DNA of 64,000 nt, from NCBI RefSeq assembly GCF_002571385.2, contig NW_019217964.1, positions 189,829 to 253,828 on the forward strand, written 5' to 3'. This DNA comes from Stylophora pistillata. Its lineage: Eukaryota. This document shows positions 540 to 12,000 of this stretch, piece after piece; within the stretch, counting starts at the first letter, position 1, and the number at the start of each line of letters is the position of its first letter. The position numbers and the translations under genes were made by a program. The notes below the pieces were generated by a model, which was not told the DNA's origin, did no database searches, and saw only the letters and a list, made by a program, of their open reading frames with translations.

Positions 540-2774
540 CATCTTCCTCAACATCCATGTCCTGCTCTTCCCGATCCAGTTCCACTCTTTTTCGTTTCCT
601 GTCACTGCCTAAAGCAGCAGAGTTTGATGACATTCCTCTCATGTGCACATACTTGGCCACTAAATTGTCAATCTGCTGATGAGGCAGCATTGGAGGAGCT
701 CCCACCTCAGCACAACTGTCTCTAACACCTGTAAAATCACAATCAATTCTTTGACTCCCAGAAGTGATTAACATACAACCTCTCCTGATAATATTAATAT
801 TAATACATTATCCAGCAAACAGGTAATAAGAATATTTCAAAACTTGTCAGATTGGAGTTTATCTTGATCTAACACCCAATTCTTGAAATTAGTTTAGAAC
901 AAAATGTGCAGCAACTTAGGTGAGGGGGGGGACCAACAGTCAGATCTTGGGACTAAAAGGGTTAGCACTTTGAATTCAACTGTGACATAATAATACATGT
1001 AACTGATCCATCATTTCTTAAGTGACTTTTTTCCCTTCCCAAGTAAGTACAAATTTAACATTAGGCTTGTAAAAGGTGAGATACAATTATAATATTAAAT
1101 GTAAACTTGTGCTTTTGTTAAGAAATCCACTTCTTGTAAGTAATGGCATTGGAAATAAAGAAATGGTTTGTGTTATCCAAATAAGGTCACATATCCATTT
1201 AGGCAGGATAAAACTTTTGTTTCATAAAATTTGTAAGACAAAGACAGCTTTTTGCATCATTTCCATAAGCTGTAAGTAGATTTACACATAAATATTGAAG
1301 AAAAAGCCTACCAAAATTCATGTACACGACGCTGAACCTTAACAATTTAATACAAGCATCAATTTTAATAGATGTTTGTCTACAAAATTCCTCTTTGCTT
1401 TTCCGTTTGGGAAATTTAGAGTGAGTGTCTAAGAATGAAAAGAACCCTTGGATACCAAATTTTTCAATTATATTTCTTACATCCTGCTTCTTTTATTCCC
1501 TTTTTCAAAGGAAATTTATATATTTGTGTTAGTGAAATATCAGTGAGTATAACCTTATTTCATAATTATTCCCTTAAAAGCAACTGGCCAAACCTAGGAA
1601 TAATGAAACTGACACCACTCAGTGAGCTTTGATGAAACTGATTAGAGCACTTCTTTCCAATTTTCTAGGTATGCAACATTAGGTTATTAAAAATACCTCC
1701 TTCTTACTATCTTCTGCAAGGTACAAACTCACCTTCTGGTAAGGGAATATTGAATCCTGGGTATTCAATGAAAGAACTTCTAAAGTGTTCTTCATTCTCG
1801 TGTTCATCTTCCTCCTCAATGTAATCATTTATGCTGCCATCTCCATCATAAATAAGCAAACTTGGTTTCACAGTCTTTGGTAAATACCCTGGTGGATAAC
1901 CCAAATGTCTCATTCGGTAAATGTATGGTGGCAAATCTTGCTCTGTGATTCCGAGTGCTTCCCTTAGCTCATCAGTAATCAACCCTGGTTTGAACCTTCC
2001 AAAGCGTTTCATTGCTGAATCATCAAGATGGTATCTAGTTCTTAAGTTCACTGGTGAAGCAAACTTATTGTGGAATTCTCGCCTGTTTGCATTGATTCTT
2101 TGCAAATCATGTGTCTCAGGGCAGTCTTGGAGAGAATGTCCAGGATTTCCACAATTGAAACAACAACTCCGACTTTTCAGCTTCAATTTTGGTGTTTCAT
2201 CTGGAGCCAAAACTCGAAAATAAACTTGTTCGTATTGAGGAATTGTCCAACCATCACTGATCTGAGGATTTAGATCAACTAACGGCAGCCCACTGCAGTC
2301 TATACAATATTCATCGTAGTACTGCAAAGAACTAATGATGGAAAAAGGTTGGCTATAACCCTTGTCCTCAGCTAACTTGCCCACTTCATAATTTGTATCA
2401 AAGACGGAAGCTGGAAAATTTTGGCTTCCAAACGACTCTCCCTCATTAAAATCGTCGGTTCGTCGTAGTATAGTTTGAATGAATTCTTCGACCTTTTCTC
2501 TGGATCTAATCGAAGACTTGTTATCGAAAAAAATCCCTTGAAATAAAGGAGAATACCTATCTTGGTGTTCAGCTGTAGTGGCACAGTTCAACTTCCACAC
2601 ACCGATCAAAGATTTCAAAGCATTCTTCAACCGTATGTTTTCTTGTAGTAACGTGTTCCAAGGCGTTTTACCAGGGCAATCATTCCTCTCTTCTGATGGT
2701 CTTTTTGTTTCCTTTTCTGCCTCAAATTCGGTAAAAAGAAGCTCTTCGTCGAAGCACGCATCTTCCGCCGCCAT
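540..2774 (-). CDS. ZCCHC8: Zinc finger CCHC domain-containing protein 8 (NEXT complex scaffold), 5' part; gene probably continues left of the window
   Basis: Exon 1 2774-1733 (donor GAAG|GTGAGT) holds zinc knuckle CFNCGNPGHSLQDCP and PSP domain FKPGLITDELREALG..LPPYIYRMRHLGYPPGY. Exon 2 728-540 (TTTTACAG|GT..GATG|GTTAGA) joins in phase 1 (GVRDSCAEVGAPPM..DMDVEED). Confidence 0.88.
745..964. mobile_element. Degenerate MITE of the TTAA-CCC...GGG-TTAA type (piggyBac-like non-autonomous)
   Basis: Ends CTTTGACTCCCAG and CTTGGGACTAAAAGGGTTA are imperfect inverted repeats; lies in a ZCCHC8 intron. Confidence 0.45.
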
Positions 2775-3270: not shown

Positions 3271-4258
3271 ATATGTAAAGGGCACAACAGATCCCTCCAG
3301 CTTTATCACTGCACTTTTTTCCCTTGAATAATCACTCTATTATCCATTCCAGCTGGCAAGAAAGTGGAAGGTTATAAAAAAAGATTGTGAAAATTCCTTT
3401 AAACTTTTAATCAATTCTCACAGCTAGAGACCCATGGCAAACAATCAACTGAATAAGACAGGACTGTTAACACTTGAACACATGAGCTAGGAATCACCCT
3501 TACAAGAGGAATAGTGGTCTCTTACTTTTGTTTTCTCTTTGTATGCTAACTTTGTTAATGTTCTTAGAGAGTAGCCCTGCTTCACCAACACTAACTGACG
3601 ACACACTCTATGAATACTGGATGGGAAAGTTTCAAGTTATGAACAGGGATGAAAGAAATTTCATTAACTCTCTAAATAGTGTGTAAAATCAATATTGGTT
3701 TATTTCACTCAAAGCAAAAGTAAGCATGTCCAAACAGATGCATTCGTGTACTGTATCTTATGCAATGTTGACTGACATCAAACACTATTCTTAATCTAAT
3801 TCTGTACTGTACCGCAGTGTACCATTGAAATGACTGTCAGTAGTACTTGTTAGTTATAGATGTGAAAAATGGCATTGTAATTAGGAAATTAGAGATCACA
3901 TCTTAAAGAACAGTGTTTTTCTGAGAATCTCATTTGTTCCTTCATGAACAAAGTCTTAAAAATTGGATATTGTTAAAATGATCATCATAGCAGATTTAAT
4001 TTAATAAATCAAAGACAGTATTCAAACAGATTGGTTCAAACTTTATGAATTTTTTCTTCAACAGAAATTTAAACCAGAGAAGAAAGAGATGTAAAGAAAT
4101 ATTTACGGCCAAAAGCAAAGTCTGTCCACAGGAAAAATTGCATGTATACAAACAATATTTTTCTTCAGTTTACAGAAAATTAAATCTTTTACATAAAAAC
4201 TTCTTGCAGTTCCTGATAAAAAGTAGTGGGCAGGTATCAGTCAGTATCACACCCTGCA

Positions 4259-5473
4259 TCAAGTGATTCCTAAATAAGGATCATCTTCACCCTGGGACCA
4301 AGTATCACCATCATCATCTCCAAGGTTACCATCTAAACTCTCAATGCCGTCACTTCCTCCATCTACTGAAAGAGGACAAGTCTTGGGGACAGCACCTGTT
4401 GATAGAAAAACAACTCCTTATCAAAGCTTTAAGTTCCTTTTAATTTAGGATTTTCCCGACTCCCCAAGATTTTTCAAGTCTGAACATACAGTGGTGCAAA
4501 CAAGGAATTAGGATATTTCATACTTACAGACAAAGGACACTGGTGTAAATCTTTTGTTAAAACTGATCCTAGATGACATTCTTGATCCCCTTATCCTTTA
4601 GAAAAATAAATTCAAGACAATGAAATTAATGTACTTTAAGCAATGATATCAGATCACTTGGACAAAAAAAACTGTCAATAAAAGCTACTCAATTAATCTA
4701 TATTTTCCCTTTTCTGAAAGTTATGTAATCCTTCAAAATTTCTGAGTTTTAAAGATATTCTAAGCCATCAAATAACATTGATTTAAGCAGTCTTGAATAA
4801 AATTTTCATGTTAACTGCACTTACAATCCACTCTCATTGCTAAGAAACGACTTCAGGAGTGGTGATGACACACTAGTACTTGATTCTGTGAATAAATGAA
4901 TAAATAGATAAATAAACAAATAAATAAATAGATAGAAAAATGAAAAAAAAAAACTCAGAAAAAAAAGCGACAAACAATTTATTCGACTAGATTCCGGTAT
5001 ACATCACTCAAAGTTAAAACTCTAGCGCAACCTTAGCGCATTAAAAGAGTTTAAATTACGTAAACAATATCATGCATGACCTGCCCTAGTGGCACACCAA
5101 TTTGGTTTCAGGATTGTAAAGTATAACAACAGTGATTAGCTTAAAAGACCAAACACTGACACACACTAAGTAGATTCATGAACGATACATTCTTTCTGTA
5201 GGTAAAAGTTAAAAGGGAATCGTAATCGAGAGGAGAATCGATACGATTGACCGGTCTGTCTTCCAAAGCGTGTGTTACAGCAGTAATCAGATGAATTTTG
5301 TACTCACTTTGTGACACATTTTTCAAGACGCAGGAGGACAAATGCTACAACAAATATAAAAATAAAGATCAGTATTAGTATTTATTGGATCGGACTAGTC
5401 TTATGGCATTGATCACCTTTGCCGCAGACGTAGAACGAGTCAGGGAACGCAAACAACGTGCAGCAGCCGCCAT
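4259..5473 (-). CDS. Uncharacterised 119-aa protein with mitochondrial-presequence-like N-terminus and acidic C-terminus (paralogue A)
   Basis: Exons 5473-5417, 5344-5308, 4885-4825, 4595-4528, 4395-4259, all GT-AG, phases 0/1/2/1, 360 nt open frame: MAAAARCLRSLTRSTSAAK-HLSSCVLKNVSQ-KSSTSVSSPLLKSFLSNESG-LIRGSRMSSRISFNKRFTPVSFV-CAVPKTCPLSVDGGSDGIESLDGNLGDDDGDTWSQGEDDPYLGIT*. Confidence 0.8.
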
Positions 5474-5546
5474 TTTGAATTTACCGCTGATCAAGGTACA
5501 TCGCCTTTATCATTCAGCGTGTAAAGCATGATGGGAAGGTAACAAA
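5474..5546. promoter_or_regulatory. 73-bp bidirectional promoter interval with a ZNF143/Staf-binding-site-like motif, flanked by TISU/YY1-like start contexts
   Basis: Minus strand 5538-5521 CTTCCCATCATGCTTTAC closely matches the Staf-binding-site consensus (YYWCCCRNMATSCMYYRCR, one mismatch). Both divergent ATGs sit in CAAAATGGCGGC. Confidence 0.65.
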
Positions 5547-7259
5547 ATGGCGGCGTTATCTGCACGTTGTTTAAGATCATTTGCTCGTGTTTCAGTGCAA
5601 ATGTCGGTAAGAAGTCTAGATAGCCTGATCTAAAGCAATGAAAATAATACACTGACTGACCAGATTTTTATTTTTGCACAGAAAACAGCTCTGAATGCGA
5701 ACAGCGCGACACAAGGTAACCAGTGCTCCAATATTTTTGCTTCCATGGTTGTTGATGTATTAAACGACAAATTATGTAACAGAGCAACATAACGAGCATA
5801 CTATAATCAGTACTATTTATCTTTTTTTAGTGAGAAGTTTGTCCTCTGCAGCAGGAAAATCCATTCTCCGAGACTGTGGATTGTAAGTATTTTTGGGTGA
5901 CGTTGTCACGTGTAAATAGTGTTCTTTTGCGATCAACCGTTTAAGATGGTTTGGTTGATCTGTTTTCTTGAGAATAACCCGTTTTGGTTGATTTAGTTGA
6001 AACCAAATTGAATCAGTTGAAAAGCACGGGCAGTGGGACTCTCGCAGTAAACAAACAAAACTGCTTAGTTACTTGCGCTATTTCTATACCCACTGGATAC
6101 TGAAGGTAGTTGGATGCAATCCCCTTCGCTTGAAAACAGTATGTTTTCTTACGTGAGCTATGGAGAAATCGTGCATCACTCAATCTCTTCATCTTCCAAA
6201 AAATATTTCCTGAAAAGAGCATTTTTTTCCCTTGCTGAAAATTTCAATTCCAAAGTCAATCAAGATCAGTGTAACATTTTGAGACAAGGCAATCAGATAA
6301 ATTCATTTTGTACTGTAATTTGTCTTGTGATGATACATCTAGGCCTGTCTATATAATTGAAGGTTTTGTGTGGGAAAGTTCATGAAAGTAGTTATCCACA
6401 ACTGTGTTTTGCCATTTTACTCATGCAGATTCCTTAACTCACTTTGAACAAAAACCTATCTTTTTTAATATTGATGTGAAAAGTAAATAAAAATAAATTC
6501 TTAAAGATTGATCAAAAGCTGAAAATACAAAGTAGTTTGGGTGAATTTTGGAATAAATGTCATTTGTACTTCAAAAGACCGCAAACTTTTTGCACATTAC
6601 TTGTGTTACTACCAGGCTCAAGACAATAGCAAGGGATAATGTTGTTAGAAATCTTGCCAGGAGACATACAAGGTTATCAGCAGCAGTCAGTAAGTACATT
6701 TTACATGTAATAAGTTACTTTGAGATTCAGGAAACCATGAACACTGAAAATTCATTGAACTTGGCCAGTAGCTCATTTCAAAATTACCCCAAGCCTCTTT
6801 TTCAAAGAGAGTCCCTCCATTTAAATCAGTGTCCACCTTGACCAAGTGACTGCCCATCAAGCCATTGTTGTAGTCTGTTTAATTAATGCTTGGAGGTGTT
6901 AGGTAAGTAATGACAGTACCAGCCATTCTAAAACTGCATAAATTTGTCCATGAAAACAGTTCTTTCCTTAGAGTTTGTTGAAAAATGAAACTGGTGTTAG
7001 AAATAACCCTGAAGATTTGAATTGTTTAGAAACAATCACAGCTATAATGTCAAACAAACTGCAAGGTTATTTCATTATTAATTATTATGTTTCTTTTTTT
7101 ACCTCTGCCTTTTACTTAGATCAAATATTGTTTACATCGGTTGTGGATATGATGTGTGAAGATGAGGAGGGAAATGGTGATGATGATATCACCACGTCAG
7201 AACTTGTTACTGATGAGGATGAAATATTGAAAGTTTCCCGAATCCTTCACACTCTGTAA
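5547..7259 (+). CDS. Uncharacterised 119-aa protein with mitochondrial-presequence-like N-terminus and acidic C-terminus (paralogue B, isoform a)
   Basis: Exons 5547-5606, 5682-5715, 5831-5882, 6616-6689, 7120-7259, GT-AG, phases 0/1/2/1: MAALSARCLRSFARVSVQMS-KTALNANSATQ-VRSLSSAAGKSILRDCG-LLKTIARDNVVRNLARRHTRLSAAV-NQILFTSVVDMMCEDEEGNGDDDITTSELVTDEDEILKVSRILHTL*. AATAAA overlaps the stop. Confidence 0.75.
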
Positions 7260-7433
7260 TAAACTCTGCTGCTGTGCTCTTTAGGGCAATGCCAAATATT
7301 TTCTTGGCTTAACAAATTGTGCCCAAGATATTTCACAATGAAAAAGTTTTATCATCGCTCCACAATTACCAGCAGACTTTGATTTTATCTATGTTTCAAA
7401 GACAGTAAGCAATTTTATTTTTGGTTTTTATAG

Positions 7434-7561
7434 GTTTGGTGATATCAAACCCACCTGTGATGATAGAAAACTCAGAATCAGATGATGATAGTTTGGAGGC
7501 TGTTTGTGGAGATGATGATGAAACATTTTCGTGTTGCGAAGAAGCAATACCTGGTCTCTGA
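7434..7561 (+). CDS. Alternative terminal exon of paralogue B (isoform b, 115 aa)
   Basis: Acceptor TTTTTATAG|GT, phase-1 compatible with exon 4. Encodes SLVISNPPVMIENSESDDDSLEAVCGDDDETFSCCEEAIPGL*, resembling paralogue A's ESLDGNLGDDDGDTWS. Two AATAAA follow (~7648, ~7703). Confidence 0.7.
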
Positions 7562-9098
7562 AACATTTGTAATGAAACAATTGTGAATGTGACCCTATAA
7601 GGTTACATAATGGTTTTATCTGTCTGTAAGATTATCTTTCTTTTTATTAATAAATGTTTTGCCTTAACTATTATCTCTCTGTAAGATTGTCTTACTTTTA
7701 TCAATAAATGGTTTGCCTTAATTATTAACTCAGGTATCTATCTACATCAACCAATCATGAAACCATCTGGAGACAAAATTCTCATGCCAAGAGTTCAAAG
7801 TCAGACTGAGCTAAGCTTGAACCTAAAGTCCCTTAAATCTTGAATACAGCACAACGCCAATCGGTTACCGCTACTCCCCCATTCTCTAAGTTCCCACTCC
7901 TCCAACAGGTATCAGGTTACATCATCCCAGAACTCATTGCGTGATTATCACTATGCTTGTAAACTGACAGTGCATGGATCATAATTGAAACAAACTCGCA
8001 TCATTATTTGGGTTAATATATAAAAATGTTAGATTAAGGAAAACAAATTTGCTCTCAATCCTATGCCTTACAGGAAAGGAAGAGTGAAAAGATAATATAA
8101 ACGGCTTCTTCATGATCCCTGAGTATGAAAAACCCAATTAACTCATCAACTACGTTGTTTTTTTAATGTGTAAGTAATGGAGCGTTTTTAAGATCGCGAT
8201 GAGTGATCGACCTTACACGATGTTAGGGGGGACGAGGTCACTTAACGTGGAGGCGACTTGGCAGGGAAGCGCAGTGATCAGCATTCTCTGCAACAGCTCA
8301 CGAATGAGTCTATTAAAGAGTACCCCTTTTCCTTATTTATATCAACGGCTCATTTTTTACTGGGCTGTCTATTGAAAAGAAAAACAAAACCTTTTTAAGG
8401 CTTAGGGAAAGATTTCGACCCTGGCCTCGACTCACTTACTGCTCGAATACGTACTGTTGTTTATCTCGTTTTGTACTAATTGGATAAAAACACACCAGGT
8501 GTTAGTAGGCAGAAGGTCAAATGAATTAAATTTTTCGCCAATTTTCTCCTGCTATGTAAAGGTGTAAGAATTCAAGCTAAGAGAGTATAAACAGTTTATA
8601 ATCTCTTTTTAAACTTATTTTAAAACAATTCCTTGGCTTTTAAGACCGATTTAACCAGCTTTGAGTTCTATAAACAGGTTATTTCACTTCACTCGAATCA
8701 AATTCGATAAATACTTATCTGTCTGGGTGTATCAGCTTCGGTAGCTTTTTCTTCTTGACTTGTCGAGGTGCACTTACCGCAAAAAGGCTGAATCGTTCAA
8801 TGGCCTCCCAAAGCATCTAATTATTCACAGAGATCTCATCCGTTTACGACTTTTGGCTCTCAGATACGTTTATTTCTTTCTCTATGACCACCTATTGCAT
8901 ATTGTAATTGTGGATTACAGAATAAGAGTTCTTTAACTGCAACGCAGTGACATATAGGTATCCAACCCAAAGTATTCAAAACTTAAGACGAGCTTTATTG
9001 ATAAAATGAATTAAATATATAAACCACCTGTTAGGGGAACTGGTACAAAGCCGACGTAGATTTCATTAAAGCGGCTTTACATACGAAAACACCATAAA

Positions 9099-12000
9099 AT
9101 GGATACCTCTGGAGCAGCCTGTACTAACGGTCATCAGTACTTGATCAGTTTTATCGCCAAAATGAACCAGATGCGAGAATCTGAGGTGCTATGTGATGTC
9201 GTACTAATGACAGAGAATGGAAGCAAAAAGTTCTATGCGCACAGAGCTGTTCTTGCCGCAAGCAGTGCATATTTTTACAAGCTCTATACAGGTACTTCGT
9301 TATCAAGGTACAACAGAGAAACAGTTCTACAAGGCATAACAGACTCTATTCTTCAGATTGTTTTGGATTACATCTACTCTGCTCACATCTTTGTTACTGA
9401 TGCAAACATTGAAGAGATACTTTGCGCTTCTTTTCACTTGGGATTAGAATCGTTGAAACTTGAATGTGAGCAGTTCCTCATTCGTTATATTTGTGTCGAG
9501 AACTGCATCAAAATGACGGCCATGGCTCGCATCTACTCATGCAAGAAACTTCTGCTGGAAGGAAAGAAATTCATGACAGAAAATTTCTTGGAGATTCAAA
9601 ACTCGGAGGAATTCTTCAAAATGCCAAAAGAGCAACTGGAGGAAATTATCGCAGACGACGACTTGAACGTGAAAAATGAGGAACAAATTTTCAATTCAAT
9701 TCGTGCGTGGACAAACTTTGATGTTATTTCAAGGCGTGACTCATTTTCCGACTTATTGAGTCACGTGCGACTGCCTTTCATCGCACGAACCTTTCTGCTC
9801 GGCACGATCGATAAGGATCCGTTAGTGACGTCATGTTCGATTTGTAGAGGTATAGTAGCCGAGGCCATGTCTTACAAAATGGCCGGCCACAAGGAGAAGA
9901 AATTGCTTCAGAATGAGAGAACTAAACGGAGGTAAATGTATGGTTAGAGCAATTTTCAATCGAGTGTCGAGAGTAATCTGGGATTGCATTGATTTTACTT
10001 TGCCTTACTCTGTGTTTGGTCCAGAAAATTCGCGCCACCGTCTCGACCAAACTGAAGCAAAAGTAAAGCCATGTAATTCCGACACAGTCGCTTGCGTGTT
10101 TTCCAGCGCTTTAGACAGTTTGGTTGGTTTTACTTTGAGTTCTCATTGGCTCTTAAGAGAATTTTTCTCTCCTCTGTTAGGACACTCAATCGCAAAGTGA
10201 TTTAAAATTCATCAACTTAGTGGAGGGGCGGGGAGGGGACGCGATGACGTACTGGTCAGCACGCCAGATATCAGGTTGAGAGGTCCTTGAGCGACCTTGA
10301 CTGTTGTGTTCTTAGGCAAGTAACCGCGATAAGATCTGGTTGGAATGGACCCTAGGCTCGAAAGACTTAACTTAGGCCTAAAAGTTCCGTGCTAAACATT
10401 TTTTTTAGGTACTACATGATCGTCAATTCAAAATATCCTTGAAATCCTTTCTCTCTTTGAGAATACCAGGTGGAAGTCTCACTTGACAGATGTTATCATT
10501 CTGGTGGGTGGAGCCATTGAAAATGGCGTCCAAGCTTGCTGTCATTGTTTCAGTCCGCTGACCAATAAATGGTACTGCCTGTCTCCAGTGATTGACAGTA
10601 GGTTGAACTTTGGCCTGGCCAGGTTACATCGCTGGTTGTATGTCGTTGGTGGTTCTACTTCTGGAGAGAATATGAACGTTCTTTCAAGTGTAGAAAGGCT
10701 GGATCCAAAATTCAACACATGGGAGAAAATCACCTCAACTACGTCAGGTAAAAGTGGTAGACAAAGGTCTGAGAAGAAAAATGCAGTCTCCTGAGATTCT
10801 CAATGAATGTGAATTAAGTCCTGTAGTGTATCCTACGCTAACAATTTAAGAACTGTTATACTCAGGCAAGAAAGAAGACCTTGTCGAGCTAGAGAAGGAG
10901 GATTAAAGGTGTGAAAACTTTAACTCAAAATGAGAACAACGAGGTTTGAACGCAGAAAGCATAACTCTAGCCCTAAGAAAACAATTCAAGCTAAAAGATA
11001 TACCCAGAAATTTATCCGCAGCTGACCCCTGAGTTAATTGCGACAGAAAGAAATTTCATATATCAAGGTTTGTTTCTTTTTTATTTTTCGTTTGTTTGTT
11101 TATCTTTAGGTCGCTTTAACCACGAGACCGTCGAGCTCAATGGGAAAATTTACGTCGTGGGAGGGGTCCTGGGAAATAGTAATCAGGAGCAAGCAATGGA
11201 TTGCTATGATCACGTGACTGATTCTTGGTTCTCGCTGTCCTCGCCCCGTCAGACCCGTTTTACACACTGTGCTGTGTCATTGGATGGATATGTTTATGTT
11301 ATTGGGGGTAAAGATGCTCTGAGAAAATTCGGCTCTAAATGATAACATAGTTCTCTCCAAATAGTTTCGTTTGAGTTTCATTTCCTGTCAATTATGTACC
11401 TCGTCTTTGTTAGCTTCAAAGTAATTGTTGGTTTTCCAACACATTTTTTTAGGATTTAAGCGACACTAGAGGCGGTTGTAGTTGGTATCAGGTTCGTGTT
11501 TGTATTAAACTAAAAATTGTCCGTCTGTGCTTGAGCCGTCACGGTAATGTCTCAGTCTGATTGAACCGGACTATATTGTGGGTCCAGAGCTCTCCGACAC
11601 TTGCTATAAATTATGGTGACTCTTAACCTCTGAATCACATTGCAAAAAGATAAACCTGAGTATACCGATTGCAATTCGGACAGCAAAGATCCCAAGGTGT
11701 AGACTCCGCATTTTAATAAAGCACATAGAGCTAGAACCACATGGCAGGCCTTCATCTCTAAAAAGAATTATTATTATTATGAGAGGTCGCTGACCAAAAA
11801 ATTAGCGTCTGTTCGAGGTTAACAAAAGAAATAGTGCTTTGATATCGACTGATTAAAAAACAAGTATCAAAAACAACGAAACCGATGGGAGCCTTTTGTA
11901 GAACACTCTTTCCGTTTAATTTTGCTGAGAACATGCAGTTGTTAAGCTTTTCTTATATCATTCTTCTGAAGGTGTCTCCAAAAACAACACAGTCCTGAAA

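What the first reader, a model, noticed from the sequence alone, without database searches (positions are those of the whole stretch)
4259..7561. Head-to-head pair of paralogous spliced microproteins: long mitochondrial-presequence-like leader plus acidic 'GDDD' tail
Seen: two five-exon genes, not recovered as such by the ORF track, start 73 bp apart on opposite strands. They share intron phases 0/1/2/1, an N-terminus (MAAAARCLRSLTR vs MAALSARCLRSFAR), an identical exon-3 end (GTGGATT|GTAAGT) and length (119 aa; alternative 115 aa). The first ~73 residues carry 12-13 R/K and only 1-2 acidic residues; each last exon carries 11-13 D/E, with SL(D/E)xxxGDDD..T(W/F)S shared between paralogue A and exon 5b. 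Known: Arg/Ser/Ala-rich, acid-free N-termini typify matrix-targeting presequences. Inference: an old inverted duplication of a mitochondrial microprotein family that I cannot place in any named family; most of the chain may be leader, and the mature product a ~45-aa acidic peptide (possible Ca2+/metal binder, or regulator or sensor of import).
Basis: partly seen in the sequence, partly recalled or inferred. Interest (0 to 1): 0.85.

Follow-up and report, generated by a model that had tools for sequence, protein, structure and literature searches.

The report
Ancient head-to-head pair of small coral proteins
Two small, expressed, back-to-back genes in this coral encode related disordered proteins with a basic, mitochondrial-signal-like head and an acidic tail. 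The same gene pair is present in a sea anemone, so it is old and under selection, but its function and location in the cell are still untested.

Summary
Gene A (minus strand, 4259-5473) and gene B (plus strand, 5547-7561) are five-exon genes with GT-AG introns in phases 0/1/2/1, and their ATGs lie 73 bp apart. PolyA RNA-seq contigs from four studies show the junctions of A and of B ending in exon 5b; no exon 4-to-5a junction was seen in this species. Model Bb is letter-for-letter the RefSeq protein "uncharacterized protein LOC111331909 isoform X2" of Stylophora pistillata, so the genes are annotated but unnamed.

- **Distribution:** orthologues of both genes occur across stony corals and in Nematostella.
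- **Arrangement:** the head-to-head layout, the intron phases and both alternative last exons of B are conserved.
- **Paralogy:** the A and B profiles match at hhalign E 3e-9.
- **Known families:** there is no Pfam or PDB match and no paper.
- **Structure:** A is predicted to be disordered.

The N-termini look like mitochondrial presequences: no acidic residue for 45-50 residues, net charge +5 to +7, and a strongly amphipathic stretch at residues 3-16. Localisation is untested. The idea that about 70 residues are a disposable leader is not supported, because leader and tails have similar dN/dS (0.13-0.26) and the leader holds blocks conserved as far as the anemone.

Verdict: a real, old, hexacoral-restricted family of unknown function, of moderate interest.

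The parts
5417..5473 (-). Gene A exon 1 (ATG at 5473-5471; MAAAARCLRSLTRSTSAAK), phase-0 donor
   Evidence: Model. RNA joint 5344/5417 in X9 and X11. Orthologous exon in L002, L003 and L005.
5308..5344 (-). Gene A exon 2 (37 nt)
   Evidence: Flanked by the joint 5344/5417, and implied by the length of X11 record 7.
4825..4885 (-). Gene A exon 3 (conserved LLKSFLS..SGL block; ends GTGGATT|GTAAGT)
   Evidence: Joint 4594/4824 in four runs. Nearly invariant block.
4528..4595 (-). Gene A exon 4
   Evidence: Joints 4393/4526 and 4594/4824 in four runs.
4259..4395 (-). Gene A exon 5: acidic tail with the near-invariant LDGNLGDDDGDTWS motif, and the stop codon
   Evidence: phmmer hits at 60-86% identity in other corals. 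dN/dS 0.13-0.26.
3698..4258 (-). Gene A 3' UTR (at least ~540 nt). AATAAA on the minus strand at 3703-3698. The exact end is not fixed.
   Evidence: RNA contigs run from 4393 down to 3717/3724 (X6, X1) or past 3600 (X9, X11). Sequence.
5474..5546 (.). 73-bp spacer between the two ATGs, taken to be a shared bidirectional promoter. Each ATG sits in CAAAATGGCGGC, a TISU/YY1-like element.
   Evidence: Both ends of the spacer are conserved in Pocillopora and Oculina. RNA contigs X9 record 20 and X11 record 7 run unbroken across 5417-5605.
5547..5606 (+). Gene B exon 1 (MAALSARCLRSFARVSVQMS)
   Evidence: Joint 5605/5681 in three runs. Matches P0032.
5682..5715 (+). Gene B exon 2 (34 nt)
   Evidence: Joints on both sides.
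5831..5882 (+). Gene B exon 3 (ends GTGGATT|GTAAGT)
   Evidence: Joints 5713/5829 and 5882/6616.
6616..6689 (+). Gene B exon 4 (LKTIARDNVVRNLARRHTRLSAAV), one of the two best-conserved blocks of the protein (with exon 1).
   Evidence: joints. Identity 100% to Pocillopora, 92% to Oculina and 64% to Nematostella.
7120..7259 (+). Gene B alternative last exon 5a (acidic, probably helical tail). The junction was not seen in this species' RNA contigs.
   Evidence: No joint 6689/7120. Open and conserved in Oculina (66% aa identity, dN/dS 0.14) and recognisable in Nematostella. Present in annotated isoforms P0035, P0036 and P0038, and in a full-length spliced transcript contig, L006.
7434..7561 (+). 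Gene B last exon 5b (acidic tail with DDDSLEAVCGDDDETFSCC), the main form in the RNA
   Evidence: Joint 6689/7434 in four runs. 81% aa identity to Oculina and 46% to Nematostella. Matches the end of P0032.
7562..7728 (+). Gene B 3' UTR with two AATAAA signals (7649-7654 and 7703-7708)
   Evidence: Contigs end at 7663-7673. A poly(A) loose end lies behind 7728 in X6. Sequence.

Best explanation
Shown:
- These are two real, polyadenylated, spliced protein-coding genes of Stylophora pistillata, transcribed divergently.
- They are ancient paralogues of one unnamed family, found so far only in hexacorals (stony corals and the anemone Nematostella).
- The head-to-head arrangement, the five-exon 0/1/2/1 structure and B's two alternative acidic last exons predate the coral-anemone split.
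- The coding sequence is under purifying selection along its whole length.

Inferred:
- The 73-bp spacer is a shared bidirectional promoter.
- The products are largely disordered, charge-bipolar proteins of about 115-120 aa.
- Their first ~20-35 residues (acid-free, Arg/Ser/Ala-rich, amphipathic) act as a mitochondrial matrix-targeting presequence.
- The rest is the working part, not a disposable leader. It consists of a conserved basic middle and an acidic tail carrying the short motif SL(D/E)xxxGDDDx(D/E)T(W/F)S.
- The tail most likely acts as a short linear motif that docks onto a basic partner.
- The shared promoter keeps A and B in step, and B can swap its tail by choice of last exon.
For: - **Gene models and RNA junctions:**
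- **Identity with the RefSeq isoform:**
- **Orthologues:** A in Pocillopora, Oculina, Montipora, Acropora, Porites and Nematostella; B in Pocillopora, Orbicella, Oculina and Porites, and in Nematostella by exon matches at the neighbouring locus.
- **Conserved pair arrangement:**. Flanking genes differ in Nematostella, so the pairing itself is what is kept.
- **Intron phases 0/1/2/1:** seen in every orthologue that could be mapped.
- **Paralogy:** hhalign 96% probability, E 3e-9, and segment shuffles.
- **Selection:** dN/dS 0.13-0.26 for leader and tails alike.
- **Disorder:** AF2 pLDDT 54 with no fold for A. The ESM Atlas model of B has pLDDT 0.46.
- **Presequence-like head in all seven sequences tested:** first D/E at residue 45-50, net charge +5 to +7 over residues 1-40, hydrophobic moment 0.82-0.88 among the highest-scoring stretches at residues 3-16, and no transmembrane segment.
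- **Nearest language-model neighbours of B:** small plant mitochondrial or chloroplast proteins, score 0.86-0.87, a lead only.
- **Start codons:** both lie in TISU-like CAAAATGGCGGC. In mammals TISU goes with very short 5' UTRs (median 12 nt) and YY1 binding (PMC2518114), and is enriched in mRNAs for mitochondrial proteins (PMC4864462).
- **Copy number:** no other copy of the family was found in the genome.
Against: - No localisation data and no dedicated predictor (TargetP, MitoFates) could be run. A basic acid-free N-terminal half also fits a nucleic-acid- or membrane-binding disordered protein.
- No MPP cleavage motif is conserved in position.
- The TISU-mitochondria link is mammalian and only statistical.
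- RNA contigs cross the whole spacer, which does not fit uniformly very short 5' UTRs.
- The tail's partner is unknown.
- The A-B complex test gave no verdict.
- Family range outside Hexacorallia could not be searched exhaustively, so 'restricted' rests on limited searches.
Confidence: 0.5

Rival explanations
1. Not mitochondrial. These would be cytosolic or nuclear disordered proteins in which the basic half binds nucleic acid, acidic lipid or an acidic protein. The acidic tail with an aromatic residue would be a docking or activation-type motif, or would fold back to mask the basic half.
For: - The basic half is as conserved as the tail, which is unusual for a presequence.
- B's basic half is predicted helical in one AF2 model.
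- The charge split is strict: pI about 12 for residues 1-70 against about 4 for the rest.
- No conserved MPP site was found.
Against: - The extreme N-terminus (MAAxARCLRSxxRS) has the composition and amphipathicity of a matrix presequence in every orthologue.
- The language-model neighbours are small organellar proteins.
- No NLS-type K/R cluster or known nucleic-acid-binding domain was found.
Confidence: 0.3
2. About 70 residues would be a long removable mitochondrial leader, and the mature product a free ~45-aa acidic peptide acting as a Ca2+ or metal binder, or as an import sensor.
For: - Arg residues cluster at positions 60-69, just before the tail: KRF in A and RRHTRL in B. R-2-type patterns occur there in B and in Nematostella A.
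- The charge reverses exactly at the exon 4/5 boundary.
Against: - The leader has dN/dS 0.15-0.22, no higher than the tails.
- B exon 4 is the best-conserved block from coral to anemone.
- The LLKSFLS..SGL block of A is nearly invariant.
- The candidate cleavage patterns are not at conserved positions in the A family.
- No EF-hand or other metal-binding domain was detected.
Confidence: 0.12
3. Non-coding or artefactual. The two loci would be divergent promoter-associated transcripts whose open frames are accidental.
For: - The products are short and of low complexity.
- They are predicted to be disordered.
Against: - The frames stay open with dN/dS of about 0.15-0.25 across corals.
- Motifs are conserved as far as Nematostella.
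- Intron phases are conserved.
- Spliced polyA RNA is seen in four studies.
Confidence: 0.01

Closest known systems
Small nuclear-encoded mitochondrial proteins with a cleavable matrix presequence (general class)
   Same: Acid-free, Arg/Ser/Ala-rich amphipathic N-terminus. Size about 115-120 aa. TISU-like start context.
   Different: No sequence relation to any named member. The region behind the N-terminus is conserved as strongly as the tail. Localisation has not been shown.
EMRE/SMDT1 (uniporter subunit: presequence, one transmembrane helix, poly-Asp C-tail)
   Same: Similar length, a presequence-like head and an Asp-rich C-terminal tail.
   Different: No transmembrane segment (highest 19-residue Kyte-Doolittle mean about 1.0). 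No Pfam or sequence match. The tail is a patterned motif with W/F, not a poly-Asp run.
Conserved head-to-head paralogue pairs with a shared promoter (for example COL4A1/COL4A2 and histone H2A/H2B; from general knowledge)
   Same: Divergent paralogues a few tens to hundreds of bp apart, kept together over very long times, which suggests co-regulation.
   Different: In those pairs the products are known to assemble with each other. Here an A-B interaction is only a conjecture, and the complex test gave no verdict.
Smac/DIABLO-type IAP antagonists (presequence removed to expose an AVPx N-terminus)
   Same: Stylophora and Pocillopora A read ...FVC-AVPK..., recalling Smac's ...LC-AVPI.
   Different: The tetrapeptide is not conserved: SIPK, KVAQ, NLVQ, NVAQ and NSPS in other species. 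B has LVIS at that place.

Membership tests
Mitochondrial matrix-targeting presequence (feature class) | N-terminal 15-50 residues rich in Arg, Ser, Ala and Leu, with essentially no acidic residues and a net positive charge | tested here: met
   First D/E at residue 45-50 and net charge +5 to +7 over residues 1-40, in seven A and B sequences from coral to anemone.
Mitochondrial matrix-targeting presequence (feature class) | Ability to form an amphipathic helix | tested here: met
   Hydrophobic moment 0.82-0.88 (11-residue window, 100 degrees) at residues 3-16, among the highest-scoring stretches in each of the seven sequences. AF2 gives no confident helix there for A and a helix at 2-26 for B in one model.
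Mitochondrial matrix-targeting presequence (feature class) | MPP cleavage motif (R-2, R-3 or R-10) at a conserved position | tested here: inconclusive
   Simple pattern scans find candidate sites, but at different positions in different orthologues. Only an R-10-type pattern giving residue 19 recurs in the A family.
Mitochondrial matrix-targeting presequence (feature class) | Demonstrated import into or localisation in mitochondria | not testable with these tools
   There is no proteomic or imaging data, and no paper mentions the gene ids.
EMRE/SMDT1 | Single transmembrane helix between presequence and acidic tail | tested here: not met
   The highest 19-residue Kyte-Doolittle mean is 0.93-1.27, below transmembrane values (the ~1.6 threshold is from my own knowledge). 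No Pfam hit.
IBM-type IAP antagonists (Smac-like) | A conserved Ala-(Val/Thr/Ile)-(Pro/Ala)-x exposed after processing | tested here: not met
   AVPK occurs only in the Pocilloporidae. Other species have SIPK, KVAQ, NLVQ, NVAQ, CIPK and NSPS.
BH3-only proteins | L-x-x-hydrophobic-G-D-x-hydrophobic core | tested here: not met
   The tails read L-D-G-N-L-G-D-D-D and L-E-A-V-C-G-D-D-D. That is one residue too many between L and G-D, with an acidic residue at the last hydrophobic position. No Pfam hit. The motif definition is from my own knowledge.
Acyl carrier protein (DSL phosphopantetheine site) | PP-binding four-helix domain around Asp-Ser-Leu | tested here: not met
   5b holds DDDSLEAV, but there is no PF00550 match at E up to 10. 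The tail, 42 aa, is too short for the domain.
TISU translation/transcription element | [quoted passage not shown] | tested here: inconclusive
   Both genes read CAAAATGGCGGC, 11 of 12 positions against the consensus as I recall it. A transcript contig from another coral has only 9 nt before the ATG. Contigs here run across the whole spacer, and transcription start sites were not mapped.
Coral acid-rich skeletal proteins (CARP/SAARP) | Secretory signal peptide and long Asp/Glu-rich domains | tested here: not met
   The N-terminus is polar and basic with no hydrophobic core. The family is also present in the skeleton-less Nematostella.

The most novel reading that the evidence does not exclude
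A and B are co-imported partner proteins specific to hexacorals. Their acidic W/F motif would be a ligand for a conserved basic component of core mitochondrial machinery, such as an import receptor, cytochrome c or a uniporter regulator. The pair, locked together by a shared promoter for over 500 million years, would then be a lineage-specific regulator of a universal mitochondrial process, and B would switch ligand by choosing between two last exons.
Probability: 0.12. Interest if true: 0.75.

Novelty: new variant of a known kind. Interest (0 to 1): 0.45.

Why it matters
If the proteins are mitochondrial, this is an unnamed family of small organellar proteins, seen so far only in hexacorals and conserved for roughly half a billion years. 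It has an unusually stable bidirectional gene pair and a conserved pair of swappable tails. That makes it a tidy, testable case for two questions: how lineage-restricted disordered proteins plug into universal machinery, and why some divergent gene pairs never separate. Nematostella has the whole pair and can be genetically manipulated, so the question can be put to experiment directly. If the proteins are not mitochondrial, the finding is still a well-supported new family, but of narrower interest.

Tried and rejected
- **Pfam.** Scans of single exons and of full-length orthologues gave nothing at E up to 10 beyond noise.
- **PDB.** Profile searches with the A, B-5a and B-5b families gave nothing.
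- **ESM Atlas.**
  - The exon 5 search gave uninformative tiny hypothetical clusters.
  - The search with full-length B gave only leads under 0.9.
- **Papers.** No paper mentions the six LOC gene ids.
- **Complex prediction.** The A plus B job gave no verdict, score 0.00 with controls not run. It is not evidence either way.
- **AF2.**
  - The model of A has no fold.
  - The model of B-5a is helical in one of five models from a four-sequence alignment. That was too weak for a fold search, so none was run.
- **JGI metagenome scan.** It returned eight coral-like loci and no new lineage.
- **Own-genome searches.** They found no further family member.
- **Family ideas rejected.** EMRE, Smac-type IBM, BH3-only, ACP and coral acid-rich proteins; see the membership tests.
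- **Left out under the operators' rule.**
  - The joined (spliced) models from the window were not typed into any search tool.
  - Searches went exon by exon by reference.
  - Later searches used database proteins that those searches returned: P0032, identical to Bb, and P0014, three residues different from A.
  - The joined translations were built only inside local scripts.
- **Assembly gaps.** The N runs in the window and the 100-N gap in the Pocillopora locus were left as they are.
Full report
**What is there**

Reading 4000-7800 and translating all six frames lets both models be rebuilt exactly.

- Gene A lies on the minus strand, with exons 5417-5473, 5308-5344, 4825-4885, 4528-4595 and 4259-4395. 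It encodes 119 aa.
- Gene B lies on the plus strand, with exons 5547-5606, 5682-5715, 5831-5882 and 6616-6689. Its last exon is either 5a (7120-7259, giving 119 aa) or 5b (7434-7561, giving 115 aa).
- Every intron is GT-AG with a pyrimidine-rich acceptor, and the phases are 0/1/2/1 in both genes.
- The ATGs are 73 bp apart.
- Both exon 3s end GTGGATT|GTAAGT.

**Is it more than chance?**

- The two best inverted repeats in the region are exon 5 of A against exon 5b, and exon 1 against exon 1.
- I shuffled within segments so that the basic-head, acidic-tail polarity could not inflate the score. Exon 1 then gives z = 5.5 and the A tail against 5b gives z = 3.9.
- The middle region, and 5a against either other tail, are not significant sequence against sequence.
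- With family profiles, A and B-5b align over 106 columns at 96% probability and E 3e-9. A and B-5a align only over the shared first 52 columns.

**Expression**

One run search and one lay of contigs were allowed. Contigs came from three polyA RNA-seq studies and a fourth run.

- They show joints at A introns 1, 3 and 4. Intron 2 of A follows from the length of X11 record 7.
- They show joints at B introns 1, 2 and 3, and from exon 4 to exon 5b.
- The exon 4-to-5a joint was not seen. The 5a region is covered only by an unspliced contig (6662-7463) at lower depth. Contigs drop minor forms, so this does not show absence.
- Two contigs run unbroken across the spacer from A exon 1 into B exon 1. 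Either some transcripts start inside the neighbour or the assembler joined overlapping ends.
- A poly(A) loose end lies behind 7728.

**Relatives**

I searched exon by exon by reference.

- Exon 5 of A against 1.84 billion representatives gave coral sequences at 60-86% identity. Among them were full-length proteins of 123 and 128 aa.
- Searching with those proteins gave A orthologues in Oculina, Pocillopora, Montipora, Acropora and Porites, and, by profile, in Nematostella vectensis.
- An open frame containing B exon 4 gave B orthologues in Pocillopora, Orbicella, Oculina and Porites.
- It also gave a protein identical to model Bb: [quoted passage not shown]. So the window is S. pistillata, and the genes are annotated but unnamed.
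- Both tail forms are annotated in other corals (P0034/P0035, P0033/P0036, P0037/P0038).
- A 957-nt JGI contig (L006) encodes a complete intron-less 5a form with only 9 nt before its ATG. 5a is therefore used in at least one coral.

**Arrangement through time**

- In Pocillopora and Oculina the A orthologue sits head-to-head with the B orthologue, with the ATGs 81 and 68 bp apart. They lie between the same Kelch-BTB and ZCCHC8 (PSP-domain) neighbours in Pocillopora; in Oculina only the ZCCHC8 side was seen.
- In Nematostella the flanking genes are different, yet the A orthologue again sits head-to-head with a 122-aa gene. Its exons match B exon 1, exon 4, 5a and 5b.
- Exact splice mapping gives phases 0/1/2/1 for A in Pocillopora, Oculina and Nematostella, and for B in Oculina.
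- The duplication, the inversion, the exon structure and the tandem 5a/5b exons therefore predate the split of anemones and stony corals. From my own knowledge that split is more than about 500 million years old.
- The whole S. pistillata assembly holds no other copy.

**Selection**

Nei-Gojobori estimates on exon-wise codon alignments:

| Comparison | A leader | A tail | B leader | B exon 5a | B exon 5b |
|---|---|---|---|---|---|
| Against Pocillopora | 0.18 | 0.13 | 0.16 | not recovered | not recovered |
| Against Oculina | 0.22 | 0.26 | 0.15 | 0.14 | 0.19 |

- Codon numbers are small (41-72), so these are rough, but leader and tail do not differ.
- B exon 4 is 64% identical between coral and anemone over 28 aa.
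- In A the block LLKSFLS..SGL is nearly invariant.
- This is the main reason I do not accept that about 70 residues are a throw-away leader.

**What the proteins look like**

- No Pfam family and no PDB relative by profile was found.
- AF2 on a 12-sequence alignment gives no fold for A (pLDDT 54). The ESM Atlas model of B has pLDDT 0.46.
- One of five AF2 models of the Oculina 5a form is a set of long helices at pLDDT 75. It comes from only four sequences and I treat it as weak.
- No transmembrane segment is present.
- In all seven sequences tested, residues 1-40 carry net +5 to +7 and the first acidic residue is at position 45-50. One of the strongest amphipathic stretches is at residues 3-16.
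- The nearest language-model neighbours of B are small plant organellar proteins at 0.86-0.87, which is a lead only.
- Both ATGs lie in CAAAATGGCGGC. That fits the TISU/YY1 element, which in mammals goes with very short 5' UTRs (PMC2518114). TISU is also enriched among mRNAs for mitochondrial proteins (PMC4864462). The consensus string itself is from my memory.

**Reading**

The most likely account is a pair of co-regulated, mitochondrially imported, disordered proteins. A short N-terminal presequence would direct import. The conserved basic middle and the acidic SL(D/E)xxxGDDDx(D/E)T(W/F)S tail would do the work, probably by docking on a basic partner.

- Shown: gene structure, expression, paralogy, conservation and purifying selection.
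- Inferred: targeting, the extent of processing, the partner and co-regulation by the spacer.
- The chief rival is a non-mitochondrial charge-bipolar disordered protein.
- Ideas tested and dropped: EMRE (no transmembrane helix), a Smac-like AVPx end (not conserved), BH3 (wrong spacing), ACP (no domain) and coral acid-rich skeletal proteins (no signal peptide, and the family is present in an anemone).
- The A-B complex job returned no verdict.

**Limits**

- Database-wide protein searches were capped, so absence outside Hexacorallia is not established.
- Transcription start sites and 5a usage in this species are open.
- The Pocillopora locus has a 100-N gap where 5a and 5b should be. I left it unfilled, and the 84-aa RefSeq model there ends in retained-intron sequence before that gap.

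**Verdict**

This is a real, ancient, unnamed family seen so far only in hexacorals. It is a new variant of known kinds: small proteins with a presequence-like head, and conserved bidirectional paralogue pairs. Interest is moderate.

Noticed in passing
window 5468-5479 (minus) and 5541-5552 (plus): Both start codons sit in the same 12-mer, CAAAATGGCGGC, in inverted orientation. It is a near-perfect TISU/YY1-type element. The spacer ends next to each ATG are conserved in Pocillopora and Oculina.
   Followed up: partly
window 6662-7463: In all four runs an unspliced contig spans B intron 4, including exon 5a. Its depth is roughly a fifth to a half of that of exon 5b in three of the four runs, and lower in the fourth. 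It could be a retained intron or a precursor of the 5a form.
   Followed up: no
window 7612-7728: The 3' end of B holds a tandem duplication of about 55 nt, and each copy has its own AATAAA (7649-7654 and 7703-7708). Contig ends and a poly(A) loose end suggest that both sites are used.
   Followed up: no
window 5417-5605: RNA contigs X9 record 20 and X11 record 7 are continuous from A exon 1 through the spacer into B exon 1. Either the two transcripts overlap head to head or the assembler merged them.
   Followed up: no
L002:6106-6205 (Pocillopora damicornis): A 100-N assembly gap lies where B exons 5a and 5b are expected. The RefSeq model P0028 (84 aa) ends in retained-intron sequence before that gap. 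The gap was not filled.
   Followed up: partly
window 4891-4938: An (AATAAATA)n-like microsatellite lies in intron 2 of gene A. The reads tool skipped 4888-4967 as a repeat.
   Followed up: no
window 1707-2774 (minus) and 9099-13873 (plus): The flanking genes are a ZCCHC8-like gene (CCHC knuckle and PSP region) downstream of A, and a BTB-Kelch gene downstream of B. Pocillopora shows the same neighbours on both sides and Oculina shows ZCCHC8; Nematostella shares neither.
   Followed up: partly
P0019 and P0025 (Pocillopora damicornis, Acropora cervicornis): These are alternative database models of gene A. One lacks part of exon 5 and the other has a different C-terminus. They look like mis-predictions of a short five-exon gene.
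   Followed up: no
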